IMG/VR virus record: IMGVR_UViG_3300028920_000001
Location: 62,001-126,000 of that record
DNA length: 64,000 nt
Reading direction: 5' to 3' (one strand)
The position numbers and the translations under genes are program-made. Below, one piece after another: positions 16,844-57,809 of this stretch. Under the pieces are notes generated by a model that saw only the letters and a list, made by a program, of their open reading frames with translations, was not told the origin of the DNA and made no database searches. Numbering within the stretch: position 1 is the first letter of the stretch; each line of letters starts with the position of its first letter.

Positions 16844-17293
16844 TTAATCAGTAATGACTTCATATAATTCAACATATTCAATCATTTCTTTTACTATTTT
16901 ACGCCAAATTGCATCTTGTTTATGGCGATGAAATGCTCGCTGTTGCAATTGTGTAAGTGAAACTAAATTCATATATGCAAACCAACATAGTGCTTCATGC
17001 GGTTCTAAGTCAGTGTAACGACGGTCATCTCGTTCATAAGTCCATTCGTCATCTTCATGAAAGAAATTCCATCCATTTTTCGAATAATATCCGGTTCTAA
17101 TTATTGCGGATTCTCCAAAGCCAGCGGGATGGTAATCAGTGACAAGCAAAATCAACCGATCATATGCGTTTCCTACGTCCAGAATTAATTTAATTGGTAA
17201 TTCCGGATCTTTGATCTCAAAAATTAAAACGGGATCGGGGACATCAGCTTGCCAATCATTCAGTTTCATCTTTGAGATGTTGTTCGAATTCAC
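16844..17293 (-). CDS. hypothetical protein
   Basis: 149-aa ORF; ends ELYEVITD* (possible degenerate tag). Confidence 0.6.
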   Translation of the reverse strand: MNSNNISKMKLNDWQADVPDPVLIFEIKDPELPIKLILDVGNAYDRLILLVTDYHPAGFGESAIIRTGYYSKNGWNFFHEDDEWTYERDDRRYTDLEPHEALCWFAYMNLVSLTQLQQRAFHRHKQDAIWRKIVKEMIEYVELYEVITD

Positions 17294-17714
17294 TTACAGA
17301 ATATACACTATAATTCTGTGTATCCTGATCTGTAGCTTCATCCCAGTGTACGGCGGGAGTTTCTGTTGAATCAGCTAATTGTACCCATTGTTGTAGTTCT
17401 TCAAGTGAATTTATTTCTACAACAAAATCATAATTATGAACATGATGTGGAAAATCACCGATTAAAACAAGTTGATTGACACCTTGGACTTGAGGTGAAT
17501 CAATAGTATATTTATCTTGAGTGATAGTTTCTTGCTTAATCGTACTTTTAGCATCTTCCACAGCTAAAAGTACACGATGGAGGTCTTGGCCTACGAGACG
17601 ACGATCGGGAGCCTTAGAATTCTCAATCTTAGTGGCAATCTGACGAAGAGCCTGAGCTACCTGAGATGGATGCATGTCTCCTCCATAATTGAAGGAGATA
17701 TAAAAATTTAACAT
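17256..17714 (-). CDS. acidic protein with type-B N-terminal leader
   Basis: likely start MHPSQVAQALRQIATKIENSKAPDRRLVGQDL after GGAG; ORF-track start is upstream. Confidence 0.7.
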   Translation of the reverse strand: MLNFYISFNYGGDMHPSQVAQALRQIATKIENSKAPDRRLVGQDLHRVLLAVEDAKSTIKQETITQDKYTIDSPQVQGVNQLVLIGDFPHHVHNYDFVVEINSLEELQQWVQLADSTETPAVHWDEATDQDTQNYSVYSVSEFEQHLKDETE

Positions 17715-18148
17715 CTCATGATTTGGAGTACTGAATAGAATTTTTCAGTTTGTTCCTGAACTTCTTCCCATCGTGATTTTCGATAGTATTTATCAAGTTC
17801 TGCCATTTCATGAGAATAAGGATAAATATTCATCATCGCAGTCCAAAAAATTCTTCTGGGAATCGATTTTTCTAGCTGATGACCGGCCGAATTCCAATTT
17901 GATTGGAATGCTCCATCAATAAAGAATTCCCATCGTGAAGGTCCATAATGGGCAAACCGAAAGACAAATCCCTGTTTGCCATAACCCCAATCTAAAGTAT
18001 CAATAATTTTGGAAACAGTTAAGTCAATTCCTATTAATCTAGTGCTAGTTTGGATAGCTCCAATTCTAATTGCTTCAGCACTATAATTTAAAGTAATTAT
18101 GTATGGATACTTAGCATCATGGGATACAAAACTCCATAAATGATCCAT
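17708..18148 (-). CDS. hypothetical protein with variant tag (IMRC)
   Basis: ends SVLQIMRC*. Confidence 0.65.
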   Translation of the reverse strand: MDHLWSFVSHDAKYPYIITLNYSAEAIRIGAIQTSTRLIGIDLTVSKIIDTLDWGYGKQGFVFRFAHYGPSRWEFFIDGAFQSNWNSAGHQLEKSIPRRIFWTAMMNIYPYSHEMAELDKYYRKSRWEEVQEQTEKFYSVLQIMRC

Positions 18149-18162
18149 TTGTTCAATTTACA

Positions 18163-18519
18163 TCAGATTGTCATGATATAAGGAACAACCCATAATTCTT
18201 CAGCTCTTTGCATCACCTTGCCCCAGATATCTGAATCTTTATGTCGTGAAAAATAACATTCAAGTGCATCACCGCCATAATATTTTTCAAGAGCCCAATA
18301 ACATAATTCTTCAGTATCATAAATGAAATCATGGTGGGATCCTATGGAATGAAGAGATCCACGAACAATAATTTTCCATCCTCTTTGATTAAATCTGGCA
18401 AAAGCTTGGGGAGATTTATAAGGATGAAGATTAGATATTTCTAATTCAGACCAAAATTTATTAACAGTGAGATAAATATAAAGTGGTGGAGCACTATTTT
18501 CTATTTGAAATGTCTCCAT
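18163..18519 (-). CDS. hypothetical protein with variant tag (IMTI)
   Basis: start reassigned to METFQ (18519) because the ORF-track start lies inside the tRNA; ends VVPYIMTI*. Confidence 0.6.
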   Translation of the reverse strand: METFQIENSAPPLYIYLTVNKFWSELEISNLHPYKSPQAFARFNQRGWKIIVRGSLHSIGSHHDFIYDTEELCYWALEKYYGGDALECYFSRHKDSDIWGKVMQRAEELWVVPYIMTI

Positions 18520-18541
18520 CAATACAGTTCTAACTCTAGAG

Positions 18542-18615
18542 CGTCCCTGGTGAGATTCGAACTCACAACCTCCCGACTTGAAAACGGGCACTCAACCATT
18601 CTGAGCTTCAGGGAC
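18542..18615 (-). tRNA. tRNA with UCA anticodon (opal suppressor, Trp-like)
   Basis: acceptor GUCCCUG/CAGGGAC, anticodon arm CCCGU-UUUCAAG-UCGGG, T-arm GUGAG-UUCGAAU-CUCAC, 5-nt variable loop, G73. Confidence 0.88.
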
Positions 18616-18624
18616 CAGTTTAAG

Positions 18625-19038
18625 CTACTTTACATCGATTAGTCCAAGCTCTTCTAGCAATTTTCGATTATAATTAGCATATGACCCATTCAGTAACATT
18701 TGCGGGTCAATATATTTAGCAGTTCCTTCTTTAGAAGACTCGAGCTCTTTATCTTCAAATTCAGCTTCATAAGTAAGAACTAAATTGTCGCCTTCAATCC
18801 CGATAAAAATCGGCTTCAATGACGTGGCATAAAGTCCAGTTTCTTCGAAAAGTTCCCTGGTTGCTGCCTGTTCCCAGTTTTCGCCATCTTCCAAATGACC
18901 ACCAGGTAACAGGAATGCCGTTTCGTCGTCCCCTTCTGACACGCCTAGAATTTGGCCGTTTGGTTTCCAAATTAAAATACGGGCAATCTTGTCAAATGAT
19001 TCAAAATCTGAATCAGTAAGTAAATCATCTAAACTCAT
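18625..19038 (-). CDS. NUDIX hydrolase
   Basis: Nudix box GGHLEDGENWEQAATRELFEETGL. Confidence 0.92.
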   Translation of the reverse strand: MSLDDLLTDSDFESFDKIARILIWKPNGQILGVSEGDDETAFLLPGGHLEDGENWEQAATRELFEETGLYATSLKPIFIGIEGDNLVLTYEAEFEDKELESSKEGTAKYIDPQMLLNGSYANYNRKLLEELGLIDVK

Positions 19039-19083
19039 CCTGCAGATTACAATTTATCAAGCGTCTAATTTATTTACAGGATA

Positions 19084-56418: not shown

Positions 56419-56668
56419 ACGACTCGTTCCAATTGGTTTAGCCAACCGGGCCCTGGAACAAGTCGAATCGAAGAATTTTAAACAATCCGATAAGCACAAG
56501 CTCGGATCACAAGGACTGTTATAGACTGTGCCTTTCCATAACACCTCATCAAAATTCTTCAGAGCGACAGGAGGGTAACGCTCCCTCACATCTTAATAGA
56601 CTCGTCACTTTCCGAATCAGTCGCTAGACAACTACCGGTTTCCCGATTCAGAGTCGGGTCCGGCTCGT
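56419..56668 (-). ncRNA. unassigned approximately 250-nt structured RNA between two tRNA-Gly genes
   Basis: stems CCCGA/UCGGG, GCGAC/GUCGC, GAGGG/CCCUC, GAAGAAUUUU/AAAAUUCUUC, AUCCGA/UCGGAU, GUUCCA/UGGAAC. Confidence 0.55.
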
Positions 56669-56744
56669 TAGAGCAGGATACGAGATTCGAACTCGTGATT
56701 TTCTGGTTGGAAGCCAGACGCCTTACCAACTTGGCTAATCCTGC
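56669..56744 (-). tRNA. tRNA-Gly(UCC)
   Basis: UCUGG-CUUCCAA-CCAGA. Confidence 0.9.
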
Positions 56745-56801
56745 AAATGACCCGAAGGTCAAGTCAACTCAGATTTCCCATCCTAAGGGCGGGCCTGATG
56801 T

Positions 56802-56875
56802 TGGAGCCAGCCTAGAGAATCGAACTCTAATCGCACCCGTACCAGGGGTGTGCTCTACCATTGAGCTAGGCTGGC
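56802..56875 (-). tRNA. tRNA-Thr(GGU)
   Basis: CACCC-CUGGUAC-GGGUG, CCA encoded. Confidence 0.9.
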
Positions 56876-56877
56876 AA

Positions 56878-56942
56878 ACGGGCAAAAAATTGACGGAAGG
56901 CAGTTTCGTTTACAAGGCGATAACCTTCAATCTCCGGCCCGT
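56878..56942 (-). ncRNA. Y-RNA-like RNA (65 nt)
   Basis: ACGGGCCGGAGAUUGAAGGUUAUCGCC...CCUUCCGUCAAUUUUUUGCCCGU; 2 nt upstream of tRNA-Thr. Confidence 0.75.
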
Positions 56943-56965
56943 AAATCTTTTTGTAGAGTCAAAAC

Positions 56966-57373
56966 ATGGTTGACGATGAACTTGATCAATTATGGGAACA
57001 AATTCCTTGGTCTCCAGGATCATCGCATATTTGTGATGATTCTAAAGAATGCAATGATTTAATAGAGGAACAACTTAAATTCTTAGAGGAGGATCCATTT
57101 AAAGATCCATCAAATCCTCATAATGACATTGTTACGTCGGAAGCAAGAGTCTACAAGTCATTAGGGAGGCATAAAATTGAAAATGAACAAAATCATGAAG
57201 GTTCGTTTCGTGTATTATACCCAAAAAAACGAACTATATTAGTAGATCTATATGGCTTAGCTTATGAACAAGGTCGTTTTAGTACTCACTTAATAACATT
57301 GAGAAAGCAAGATGCAGAGCAACAGGTAGAAACTCGCAAGAAAGCTATTATACTTAGTGTGATGGAGTCATAA
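56966..57373 (+). CDS. hypothetical protein with C-terminal VMES tag
   Basis: ends IILSVMES*. Confidence 0.7.
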   Translation: MVDDELDQLWEQIPWSPGSSHICDDSKECNDLIEEQLKFLEEDPFKDPSNPHNDIVTSEARVYKSLGRHKIENEQNHEGSFRVLYPKKRTILVDLYGLAYEQGRFSTHLITLRKQDAEQQVETRKKAIILSVMES

Positions 57374-57580
57374 ATGGCCGTTTATCCTTATCATTGCACT
57401 AATAAAAAATGCGGCCATGAATGGGAAGCTGAACACGGGATGAACGAAGACCCACTTAAGAAATGCCCTAAGTGTAAAAAGAAAACAGCTAAAAGAGACA
57501 TTGCTGGATCAAATTTTGTTCTTAAAGGTCCTGGTTGGGCTGATGATGGTTACAGCCAAAAATTTAACCCTGAGACTTAG
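57374..57580 (+). CDS. FmdB-family zinc-ribbon protein
   Basis: MAVYPYHC..KCGHEWE...M.EDPL..CPKC...FVLKG.GW. Confidence 0.85.
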   Translation: MAVYPYHCTNKKCGHEWEAEHGMNEDPLKKCPKCKKKTAKRDIAGSNFVLKGPGWADDGYSQKFNPET

Positions 57581-57809
57581 TAGCTTCTAATTCTTTTTCC
57601 ATTTCTTCTAAAGCATCATAATATCGAGGATCTTCAACTAAATGGTCTCTTACAATCTCTAAGGCAATATTGGCATCATCAGTATGCTCTAATTCAACTA
57701 AAATCCCTTTACCTAAAGCACAGGGATCAAATTGATTAATATCGCATTCATCAGCTTTCCCACCCGGAAGTTGATCAGTGATCCTTAAAGCTAACTTAGA
57801 TAAATCCAT
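57564..57809 (-). CDS. DUF5661-like phage protein with type-A N-terminal leader
   Basis: LPGGKAD...FDP.AL.KGI.VELEHT.D..IA.EI..DHL.EDP.YY..L. Confidence 0.7.
   Translation of the reverse strand: MDLSKLALRITDQLPGGKADECDINQFDPCALGKGILVELEHTDDANIALEIVRDHLVEDPRYYDALEEMEKELEATKSQG

What the first reader, a model, noticed from the sequence alone, without database searches (positions are those of the whole stretch)
17256..57809. Two N-terminal leader families appended to otherwise different proteins
Seen. Type A, M(D/N)L(D/N/S)(K/R)(I/L)A(A/T/L)(R/K)(I/M): 44369, 44920, 45417 and 57564, with looser matches at 23988 and 3546. Type B, MxPxQ(L/V)(S/A)xxLRxIAxxIxxSxxPxRxLVxxDL (about 40 aa): 17256, 42655 and 49172. 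Both share an IAx(R/K)I core. In 42655 and 57564 the leader precedes a recognisable domain (ferritin/Dps-like; DUF5661-like), so it looks modular. Most carriers are acidic and none has a C-terminal tag. Established: T4 internal proteins use a short N-terminal capsid-targeting sequence. Inference: head-packaging or scaffold-binding leaders marking late virion cargo.
Basis: partly seen in the sequence, partly recalled or inferred. Interest (0 to 1): 0.66.

Follow-up and report, generated by a model that had tools for sequence, protein, structure and literature searches.

The report
Interchangeable docking leaders on huge-phage proteins
A 427-kb phage puts one of two short, interchangeable leader peptides on about 25 otherwise unrelated, mostly acidic small proteins; this most likely marks them for loading into the phage head, though that destination is inferred, not shown.

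Summary
The window is part of a complete 426,960-bp phage genome.

**Type A** (M-[DN]-[LF]-x-[KR]-I-A-x-R-I-A, 12 aa):
- It starts 17 predicted proteins, against 0.005 expected by chance.
- Seven of these lie in tandem directly after the major capsid gene, outside the window.

**Type B** is a sharply bounded 39-aa two-helix module:
- It occurs on 5 proteins here and on 7-11 in each of three close relatives.
- It is found in 1,013 protein clusters (50% identity) in metagenomes.
- A limited-sensitivity search found none in cellular reference genomes.

**The leaders are modular:**
- The protein bodies share no similarity once the leader is removed.
- Homologous bodies carry A in one phage, B in another, and none in a third.
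- In AlphaFold2 models the leaders are low-confidence helices on a linker.
- Neither leader matches a Pfam or PHROG family.

**Function is inferred.** The best reading (about 0.45) is a head-loading or docking tag, analogous to the T4 capsid-targeting sequence or a scaffold's coat-binding helix-turn-helix.
- For: conserved head-module proteins carry A-like helices, carriers sit beside capsid genes, and the virion capsid protein is the only shell protein found among those searched for.
- Against: no conserved cleavage site follows either leader, and many carriers lie far from the head genes.
- No direct evidence that the leaders bind any head protein was obtained.

The parts
44369..44914 (+). 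Type-A carrier, 181 aa, pI 4.2. Leader is residues 1-12 (44369-44404). No Pfam or PHROG family for the body.
44920..45423 (+). Type-A carrier, 167 aa, pI 4.3. In tandem with the previous gene; shares only the leader and a short L-x-L-x-GPF stretch with its neighbours.
45417..45770 (+). Type-A carrier, 116-117 aa. Start is the ATG at 45417 or the GTG at 45420. Third gene of the tandem trio.
57564..57809 (-). Type-A carrier, 81 aa: leader 1-12, loop, then a DUF5661 domain (residues 22-73).
17256..17675 (-). Type-B carrier, 139 aa from the ATG at 17675 (GGAGGAG 4 nt upstream). Leader is residues 1-39. The listed ORF start at 17714 is probably not used.
42655..43209 (+). Type-B carrier, 184 aa: leader 1-38 (two helices), linker 39-45, then a Dps-like ferritin bundle (45-183).
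49178..49462 (+). Type-B carrier, 94 aa (the ORF is open from 49172). Leader is residues 1-39.
23988..24296 (+). Possible divergent member (N-terminus NTEILKQIAARVAAD, eight residues before I-A). Not significant by HMM.
3546..3881 (-). Possible divergent member (MDDQILHNLAIRIAN, same spacing). Not significant by HMM.

Best explanation
The two leaders are interchangeable protein-docking modules. Type A is a 12-residue amphipathic helix, with L3, I6, A7, I10 and A11 on one face and K5 and R9 on the other. Type B is a 39-residue basic helix-turn-helix whose first helix carries the same L-[KR]-x-I-A-x-[KR]-I core. Each module is joined by a short non-conserved linker to a small, usually acidic, non-enzymatic protein, such as a Dps-like protein, DUF5661, pentapeptide or LRV repeats, a zinc ribbon, or a body of unknown type.

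Most likely the module docks its cargo to a component of the assembling head, so the cargo ends up inside the virion. The capsid protein's inner face is the best candidate because it is the most conserved protein of the clade; the scaffold core is the alternative. The cargo may then be delivered with the DNA.

Shown here: the modularity, the swapping, the restriction to viral and metagenomic sequence, and the presence of A-like helices on head-module proteins.

Inferred: the binding partner, encapsidation, and any later role. Because no conserved cleavage site follows the leader, the tag may stay on the cargo, as in encapsulins and P22 scaffold fusions, rather than being cut off as in T4.
For: **1. 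Modularity**
- 17 exact type-A N-termini against 0.005 expected, or 20 by HMM; 5 type-B carriers.
- Stripped bodies share no BLASTP similarity.
- Conservation of B stops abruptly at residue 40.

**2. Interchangeability on homologous bodies**
- Genome 306302 (A) matches P0027 (B), E 6e-12.
- Genome 308229 (A) matches P0042 (B), E 1e-10.
- Genome 305757 (64-aa domain, then an internal A) matches P0057 (same domain, then an internal B), E 2e-15.
- Dps-like homologues carry B, an A-like leader, another extension or none.
- The gene before a conserved 338-aa protein carries A here, B in G003, and a third leader in LR745208.

**3. Link to the head**
- The gene order runs terminase, portal, a 744-aa protein with an internal A motif, protease, a 422-aa scaffold-like protein, the HK97-fold capsid protein, then seven tandem A carriers.
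- The 374-aa gene upstream of the terminase keeps an A-like N-terminus in four relatives.
- A- or B-like carriers lie 2-8 kb after the capsid gene in G001-G003.

**4. Only shell found**
- There is no encapsulin and no microcompartment shell gene in the genome.

**5. Conservation**
- The capsid protein is 87-90% identical between relatives. The portal is 69-71% and the scaffold-like protein 37-52%.
- That matches leaders that stay conserved across more than 1,000 clusters.

**6. Bivalent forms**
- B-linker-B proteins exist, as expected of a module that binds a repeated lattice.

**7. Distribution**
- A B-consensus query found 0 loci in 185,579 reference prokaryote genomes and 7 in IMG/VR.

**8. 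Precedent**
- T-even internal proteins are diverse and share only a capsid-targeting sequence (PMC3012670, read).
Against: - No experiment or proteome places any carrier in a virion.
- No fixed Glu or other cleavage motif follows type B. After type A, a Glu at positions 12-16 occurs in about half the carriers, which is unremarkable for such acidic proteins.
- In the complete relative G001 most carriers lie 120-183 kb along the genome, far from the capsid gene at 328 kb. The tandem array after the capsid gene is specific to this genome.
- In the window the carriers sit among tRNA genes.
- The module also occurs internally and at C-termini: 29 of 174 copies. In the protein at genome 240183 it opens each of two internal repeats, so in some proteins it may belong to a folded unit.
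- Phage G, a distant relative, has no such leader after its capsid gene.
Confidence: 0.45

Rival explanations
1. The modules are general 'sticker' or oligomerisation tags. They recruit client proteins to some other phage-built assembly in the cytoplasm, such as a replication or translation factory, a condensate or a filament, or to each other. They do not take cargo into the head.
For: - B-linker-B and B-(K-rich)-B proteins look like multivalent cross-linkers.
- Most carriers in G001, and those in the window, are far from the head genes.
- No cleavage motif follows the leader.
- The module works at N-terminal, internal and C-terminal positions.
- Related contigs encode an actin-like (Volactin) gene.
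Against: - A-like helices are conserved on genes embedded in the terminase-portal-protease-capsid block.
- Carriers recur next to the capsid gene.
- No candidate compartment shell was found among those searched for.
- No enzyme of replication, translation or metabolism carries a leader.
Confidence: 0.25
2. The basic leaders are small nucleic-acid-binding tethers. They hold acidic cargo on the phage DNA, whether for protection, for mimicry control or for travelling with the genome.
For: - Type B has about eight conserved K/R positions in a helix-turn-helix.
- Cargo includes a Dps-like protein.
- Some B-x-B proteins have lysine-rich centres.
Against: - Type A has only two basic residues in 12, yet it substitutes for B on homologous bodies.
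- The conserved positions are mostly hydrophobic (L10, I13, A14, I17, L27, V28, L32), which is typical of a protein-protein interface.
- No known DNA-binding family matches.
Confidence: 0.08
3. The leaders are N-terminal degradation or stability signals, for example resembling ClpX N-motifs, that time the lifetime of accessory proteins.
For: By my recollection, type A (N-L-S-K-I) loosely resembles the polar-hydrophobic-x-basic-hydrophobic N-motif of lambda O and E. coli Dps. This comparison was not tested with a tool. Most copies are exactly N-terminal.
Against: - Functional copies exist internally and at C-termini.
- A 39-residue two-helix module is far larger than a degron.
- A and B are interchangeable.
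- The phage encodes no ClpP.
Confidence: 0.05
4. There is nothing modular: the carriers are ordinary paralogues and the shared N-terminus is simply part of their common fold.
For: - The three tandem genes at 44369-45770 also share L-x-L-x-GPF just after the leader.
- In the protein at genome 240183 the helix opens each of two internal repeats.
Against: - No similarity between bodies remains after stripping the leader.
- Dps-like and DUF5661 homologues exist without the leader.
- Pfam and PHROG profiles begin after the leader.
- The leader has low pLDDT and is separated from the domain by a linker.
Confidence: 0.03

Closest known systems
T4 capsid-targeting sequence (CTS) of the T-even internal proteins
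   Same: A roughly 10-residue N-terminal peptide is the only thing shared by a diverse, fast-evolving set of small proteins. In T4 it suffices to load them, or foreign proteins, into the prohead scaffold core (PMC3012670). Here a 12-residue N-terminal helix is shared by about 19 unrelated small proteins, seven of them in a tandem array.
   Different: - The head genes are not T4-like: the capsid protein is a 297-aa HK97-fold protein and no S77 protease was detected.
- No conserved protease site follows the leader.
- There is a second, 39-residue leader type.
- The carriers are acidic, whereas by my recollection the T4 internal proteins are basic.
- Packaging has not been shown.
Encapsulin cargo-loading peptides
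   Same: A short terminal peptide on diverse cargo, classically ferritin-like proteins, docks them to the inner face of an HK97-fold shell and is not cleaved. Here a Dps-like ferritin carries leader B, and the only HK97-fold shell protein found in the genome is the capsid protein.
   Different: - By my knowledge, encapsulin peptides are mostly C-terminal, extended and of G-S-L type. These leaders are N-terminal and helical.
- There is no Linocin_M18 encapsulin gene in the genome.
- The shell here would be a DNA-filled virion.
P22-type scaffolding protein coat-binding helix-turn-helix, and its use to load fusion cargo
   Same: A basic helix-turn-helix of roughly 30-40 residues binds the inside of the coat lattice, and proteins fused to it are encapsidated (established knowledge). 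Type B is predicted as two helices, residues 3-17 and 25-38, with conserved basic residues. B-linker-B proteins resemble a covalent scaffold dimer.
   Different: - The module sits at the N-terminus of small cargo proteins, not at the C-terminus of the scaffold.
- The HMM detected no significant similarity to this phage's 422-aa scaffold-like protein.
- Binding has not been shown.
Bacterial microcompartment encapsulation peptides
   Same: N- or C-terminal amphipathic helices of about 18 residues on a poorly conserved linker, with a hydrophobic i, i+3/4, i+7/8 pattern, attached to unrelated cargo (established knowledge). Type A has the same pattern.
   Different: There is no BMC shell gene in the genome. 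The sequences are unrelated and the context is a phage.
Ejection-protein propeptides of phiKZ/SPN3US-like giant phages
   Same: Giant phages package many internal proteins that enter the cell with the DNA, and these are processed by the prohead protease (PMC5694885 and PMC7411985, abstracts seen).
   Different: By my knowledge, those propeptides are long and not a shared short motif, and they end at a defined protease site. No such site is seen here.

Membership tests
T4-type capsid-targeting sequence system | One short N-terminal peptide shared by otherwise unrelated small proteins of one phage | tested here: met
   17-20 type-A and 5 type-B carriers; the bodies are unrelated.
T4-type capsid-targeting sequence system | Prohead-protease cleavage site (L/I-x-E in T4) directly after the leader | tested here: inconclusive
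   Type B has no fixed residue after position 39. In type A a Glu at positions 12-16 occurs in about half the carriers, but these proteins are 20-25% D+E.
T4-type capsid-targeting sequence system | T4-like head genes (gp23-type capsid protein, gp21 S77 protease, gp22 core) | tested here: inconclusive
   - The capsid protein is a 297-aa HK97-fold protein; close homologues are named so by NCBI.
- The protease matches only phrog_18299.
- PF03420 gave no match, but that search's control genomes were also silent.
- gp23 and gp22 families were not searched.
T4-type capsid-targeting sequence system | Carriers are present in virions and the leader is necessary and sufficient for packaging | not testable with these tools
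   Needs virion proteomics and leader-reporter fusions.
Encapsulin cargo-loading peptide | A dedicated encapsulin shell gene (Linocin_M18 / HK97-fold without a portal) near the cargo | tested here: not met
   No PF04454 match in the complete genome, although the control genomes gave matches. The only full HK97-fold protein is the virion capsid protein.
Encapsulin cargo-loading peptide | A terminal peptide on diverse cargo, including ferritin-like proteins, that is absent from homologues which are not cargo | tested here: met
   Dps-like homologues occur with B, with A, with another extension or with no leader.
P22-type scaffold coat-binding domain | A basic helix-turn-helix of about 30-40 residues | tested here: met
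   AlphaFold2 predicts helices 3-17 and 25-38. Conserved basic residues are at positions 2, 11, 12, 16, 21, 25, 33 and 34.
P22-type scaffold coat-binding domain | Located at the C-terminus of the phage's own scaffolding protein | tested here: not met
   The 422-aa scaffold-like protein gives no HMM match to B. 145 of 174 modules are at N-termini of small proteins.
P22-type scaffold coat-binding domain | Binds the coat protein | not testable with these tools
   Needs binding assays or prohead cryo-EM.
BMC encapsulation peptide | Microcompartment shell proteins encoded with the cargo | tested here: not met
   No PF00936 match in the genome, although the control genomes gave matches.
Known Pfam / PHROG domain | The leader itself matches a curated family | tested here: not met
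   No Pfam hit covers the leader in 9 window proteins or in 150 type-B carriers. No PHROG hit either.

The most novel reading that the evidence does not exclude
Types A and B, together with a third leader seen in LR745208, form a sequence-addressed cargo-loading system of a large, uncultured clade of huge phages. On this reading:
- Any protein carrying the tag is docked, uncleaved, to the very conserved HK97-fold capsid lattice.
- B-linker-B proteins act as minimal cross-linking scaffolds.
- The fast-turning-over acidic cargo (DNA mimics such as pentapeptide-repeat proteins, Dps-like proteins, and unknowns) is an injected anti-defence and DNA-protection arsenal.

The leader would then serve as a bioinformatic handle that reads out the injected proteome of hundreds of uncultured phages.
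Probability: 0.3. Interest if true: 0.8.

Novelty: new variant of a known kind. Interest (0 to 1): 0.62.

Why it matters
- **Reading virion cargo from sequence.** Huge phages are almost all uncultured, so what they carry inside the head is unknown. A short, very conserved tag marking a changing set of small proteins would let that cargo be read from sequence alone across hundreds of metagenomic genomes. It would also point to candidate injected anti-defence proteins.
- **An undescribed family.** The 39-residue module is a large family with no Pfam or PHROG entry: 1,013 clusters at 50% identity.
- **A natural experiment.** It has a natural 12-residue substitute. That makes a compact, directly testable pair for learning what a minimal encapsidation or docking signal needs.
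- **Possible tools.** If it does load cargo into an HK97-fold capsid, it would be a ready-made tag for packaging foreign proteins.

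Tried and rejected
- **Complex prediction.** I ran complex prediction on the capsid protein (alignment A5) with the type-B leader (alignment A4). It returned no verdict, score 0.00, which is neither support nor evidence against binding.
- **Similarity to the scaffold.** By eye, the 422-aa scaffold-like protein has a B-like stretch (ASLAERIAHATLRTDNKDLV...). An HMM built from 174 modules did not detect it in this phage or in LR745208, so I dropped the idea.
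- **Cleavage motif.** Position-by-position composition after the type-B leader shows no fixed residue.
- **Late-promoter motif.** k-mer enrichment in 158-193 upstream regions gave only the tRNA T-loop and weak AT-rich words. No timing could be inferred.
- **Function of head-module proteins.** Pfam, PHROG and the ESM Atlas gave nothing usable for the 374-aa head-module carrier. Pfam and PHROG gave nothing for the 375-, 642- and 744-aa head-module proteins either.
- **Protease family.** No PDB sequence match; only phrog_18299.
- **Relatives without the leaders.** The small genes after the phage G capsid gene, and 41 kb around the LR745208 portal, have no A or B leader.
- A stricter 41-base pattern found 0 hits in genome contigs and 3 in viral contigs.
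- **Rejected on the evidence.** A RiPP leader, because the carriers are folded domains of 80-380 aa. An mRNA-level signal, because the codons vary synonymously and one internal copy begins with a non-start GTA codon.

Full report
**What the window is**

The 64-kb window is bases 62,001-126,000 of a single 426,960-bp contig with 40% G+C. IMG/VR classes the contig as a complete virus record with direct terminal repeats. The window holds:
- a tmRNA and about 25 tRNA genes;
- an EF-Tu gene, a Ro60/TROVE gene, a sigma-70 factor, RuvB, adenylosuccinate lyase and a GIY-YIG endonuclease;
- many small ORFs.

By portal similarity the nearest records are:
- an uncultured 485-kb phage, LR745208 (46% identity);
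- Tunturiibacter phage Tunturi_5 (39%);
- Bacillus phage G (27%).

This is therefore a huge phage of the wider phage-G-like assemblage.

**Checking the observation**

All seven main carriers are at the stated places. Three starts need correcting.
- The type-B leader of the 17256-17714 (-) ORF begins at the internal ATG at 17675, which has GGAGGAG just upstream.
- The 49172 ORF most likely starts at 49178.
- The 45417 ORF may start at the GTG at 45420.

I built HMMs from the leaders and ran them over all six frames of the whole genome. Type A also starts, or in two cases lies inside:
- seven tandem genes at genome 305,757-308,591;
- genes at 317,689 (-), 320,418, 311,520 and 311,843;
- a divergent pair at 239,639 (-) and 240,183;
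- a 374-aa protein at 286,060;
- a 744-aa protein at 295,348, where the motif is internal.

Type B also starts genes at 317,758 and 311,327.

A type-A regular expression hits 17 predicted N-termini. It averages 0.005 hits in residue-shuffled proteomes and none in the reversed genome. Codons differ synonymously between copies, and one internal copy begins with the non-start codon GTA. Selection is therefore on the peptide, not on DNA or mRNA.

The two 'looser' matches (23988, 3546) are not significant. They do share a distinct spacing with a third protein, MKPGHLQRIASRLAA at genome 244,768, which reads like helix 1 of type B on its own.

**Anatomy of the two leaders**

Type A is M-[DN]-[LF]-x-[KR]-I-A-x-R-I-A (alignment A3).
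- L3, I6, A7, I10 and A11 fall on one helical face.
- K5 and R9 fall on another.

Type B was defined from 174 copies. Its consensus is M-K-P-S-Q-[LV]-[AS]-x-x-L-R-x-I-A-x-x-I-[DE]-N-S-K-N-P-x-R-x-L-V-A-x-D-L-[KR]-x-[VI]-[LI]-A-A-[VLI].
- P3, L10, I13, A14, I17, S20, P23 and V28 are each present in more than 90% of copies.
- Conservation stops abruptly at position 40. Beyond it the composition turns to G, S, P, E, A and D, like a linker.

AlphaFold2 models agree with this picture.
- In the Dps-like carrier, the leader forms helices 3-17 and 25-38 at pLDDT 60-70. A linker (39-45) follows, and then a bundle with pLDDT above 90 whose best PDB matches are Dps proteins.
- In the DUF5661 carrier, helix 3-12 has pLDDT of about 52 and the domain is above 84.

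A profile-profile comparison aligns A positions 3-11 with B positions 10-18 (P 2.4e-4). Type A therefore looks like a minimal version of helix 1 of B.

**Modularity and interchangeability**

With leaders removed, the 27 candidate carriers of this genome share no BLASTP similarity at E < 0.01, apart from two chance-level hits. No carrier body has a PHROG family except the Dps-like one (phrog_3636, residues 45-183).

Homologous bodies carry different leaders.
- The protein at 306,302 (A) matches P0027 (B).
- The protein at 308,229 (A) matches P0042 (B).
- The protein at 305,757 has a 64-residue domain followed by an internal A. P0057 has the same domain followed by an internal B.
- Among nine Dps-like homologues, three including the window protein carry B, one carries MDLRQVATRVAA (A-like), two carry another extension and two carry nothing.
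- Close DUF5661 homologues keep A, and distant ones lack it.
- The gene just before a conserved 338-aa protein carries A here, B in relative G003, and a third shared leader (MTTLRSKLIRLAH..P.LRP.LLPLLKEA) in LR745208.

Copy numbers also look complementary.

| Genome | Type A | Type B |
|---|---|---|
| This genome | 20 | 5 |
| G001 (complete) | 7 | 8 |
| G002 (60% complete) | 2 | 7 |
| G003 (47% complete) | 6 | 11 |

**Distribution**

An exhaustive HMM search with nine type-B leaders found 1,013 cluster representatives (50% identity) at E <= 1e-3, and 402 at E <= 1e-10.
- Of 174 modules in the best 150 proteins and three further cluster members, 145 lie within eight residues of the predicted start.
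- The other 29 are internal or C-terminal. They include B-linker-B proteins and B-(lysine-rich)-B proteins.
- Pfam recognises almost nothing in these 150 proteins: LRV/HEAT repeats, one ferritin, and nothing that covers the leader.
- Longer carriers from relatives add pentapeptide-repeat and LRV proteins.
- No enzyme carries a leader.

All ten proteins looked up come only from metagenomic sources, on contigs of up to about 430 kb. The two neighbourhoods I examined look like huge phages, with Mom, a sigma factor, a clamp loader and an intein-split gene.

A consensus-like B query found no locus in 185,579 reference prokaryote genomes and seven in IMG/VR. A strict DNA pattern gave 0 and 3 hits respectively. 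These scans have limited sensitivity.

**Link to the head**

Outside the window I located the head module.

| Gene | Genome coordinates | Note |
|---|---|---|
| Terminase large subunit | 290,853-292,799 | |
| Portal | 293,496-295,319 | |
| 744-aa basic protein | from 295,348 | internal DLSKMAARIAVE |
| Prohead protease | 299,465-302,224 | split by a LAGLIDADG intein |
| Acidic scaffold-like protein, 422 aa | 302,267-303,535 | |
| 224-aa protein | 303,749-304,423 | |
| Capsid protein, 297 aa | 304,457-305,350 | |
| Seven tandem type-A genes | 305,757-308,591 | directly after the capsid gene |

The capsid protein has a weak PF05065 match. It has 1,647 homologues, the top 120 of which are 83-99% identical, and NCBI names two of them as HK97-fold major capsid protein.

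Other head-related evidence:
- The 374-aa type-A protein lies in a conserved block upstream of the terminase. It keeps an A-like N-terminus in G001, G002, G003 and a fourth contig.
- Variants of the internal motif persist in two of three orthologues of the portal-adjacent protein.
- An A- or B-like carrier lies 2-8 kb after the capsid gene in each of G001-G003.
- In LR745208 a carrier of the third leader sits between the scaffold-like gene and the capsid gene.
- The genome has no encapsulin gene, no microcompartment shell gene and no ClpP.
- Between this genome and G001-G003 the capsid protein is by far the most conserved head protein.

| Protein | Identity to G001-G003 |
|---|---|
| Capsid protein | 87-90% |
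| Portal | 69-71% |
| Protease N-terminal part | 65-69% |
| Terminase | 57-62% |
| Scaffold-like protein | 37-52% |

That ranking makes the capsid protein the most plausible partner for leaders that stay this conserved. This is an inference.

**What argues against head loading, or is missing**
- Nothing places a carrier in a particle.
- There is no fixed cleavage site after the leader.
- Most carriers in G001, and those in the window, lie far from the head genes. The tandem array after the capsid gene is peculiar to this genome. T4's internal-protein genes are also dispersed, by my recollection, so this counts only weakly against.
- In the protein at 240,183 the helix opens each of two internal repeats, so there it may be structural.
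- No promoter motif was found that could date expression.

**Conclusion**

The head-packaging part is the best available explanation at about 0.45 confidence, ahead of:
- a docking tag for some other phage assembly (0.25);
- a nucleic-acid tether (0.08);
- a degron (0.05);
- plain paralogy (0.03).

In mechanism it resembles the T4 capsid-targeting sequence (PMC3012670), encapsulin and microcompartment targeting peptides, and scaffold coat-binding helix-turn-helix domains. It is not a sequence member of any of these, and it fails several of their defining features (see the membership table). I rate it a new variant of a known kind. It belongs to a very large and undescribed family, and the natural A/B swaps make it directly testable.

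Noticed in passing
window 13832-14185 (-), 18541-18615 (-), 33979-34105 (-), 50507-50633 (-): The phage carries its own tmRNA (tag ANDNASLAIAA). ARAGORN calls one tRNA as SeC with anticodon TCA, which could act as a UGA suppressor. Two Rfam tRNA matches span 127 nt and ARAGORN did not call them; they may be intron-containing tRNAs. The whole genome has 38 tRNA/tmRNA genes.
   Followed up: no
window 35892-37673 (-): A Ro60/TROVE plus vWA protein (593 aa) is encoded here. Rfam found no Y RNA in the window at gathering thresholds.
   Followed up: partly
window 5955-7142 (-) and 27747-28871 (-): There is a saccharopine-dehydrogenase-like protein and a PLP-dependent Orn/DAP/Arg decarboxylase-like protein. 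From memory, this pair is the carboxy(nor)spermidine route to polyamines, which would be relevant to neutralising packaged DNA. Not tested.
   Followed up: no
window 63069-63995 (-), continuing beyond the window to genome 126268: A phage-encoded EF-Tu, with all three domains matched.
   Followed up: no
genome 299465-302224 (L001 15465-18224): The prohead protease gene is interrupted by a Hint/LAGLIDADG intein. Orthologues in G001-G003 (about 500-570 aa) lack it.
   Followed up: partly
genome 311327-311843 (L002 7327-7843): A 61-aa type-B protein ends in a PAAEP repeat and overlaps, in another frame, the ORF that goes on to a type-A carrier (MDLARIARRL...). A frameshift inside the repeat would give a B-linker-A fusion. 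B-linker-B proteins exist elsewhere.
   Followed up: no
L016 3664-3846 (-) (IMG/VR contig 3300032053_000004): A type-A leader whose R-I-A-S unit is expanded to six tandem copies (MNFSRIASRIASRIASRIASRIASRIAS...).
   Followed up: no
L006 29133-29537 and 36760-37815 (LR745208.1): The 485-kb relative lacks A and B. Two of its proteins, of 134 and 351 aa, share a third N-terminal leader, MTTLRSKLIRLAH..P.LRP.LLPLLKEA. One of them lies between the scaffold-like gene and the capsid gene.
   Followed up: partly
genome 238529-238918 (L003 4529-4918); also G001 126130-126303 and 190865-191095: Small ORFs weakly resemble residues 167-242 of the capsid protein (E 1e-4 here; 3.5e-10 and 2e-6 in G001). The ORF in this genome and the one at G001 126130 lie near leader-carrying genes; the neighbourhood of the third was not checked. 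They could be capsid-fragment relics or decoys, or the matches could be chance.
   Followed up: partly
L048 7125-9251: A related metagenomic contig encodes an actin-like 'Volactin' (PF25216) gene split by an intein, a few kb from a type-B carrier.
   Followed up: no
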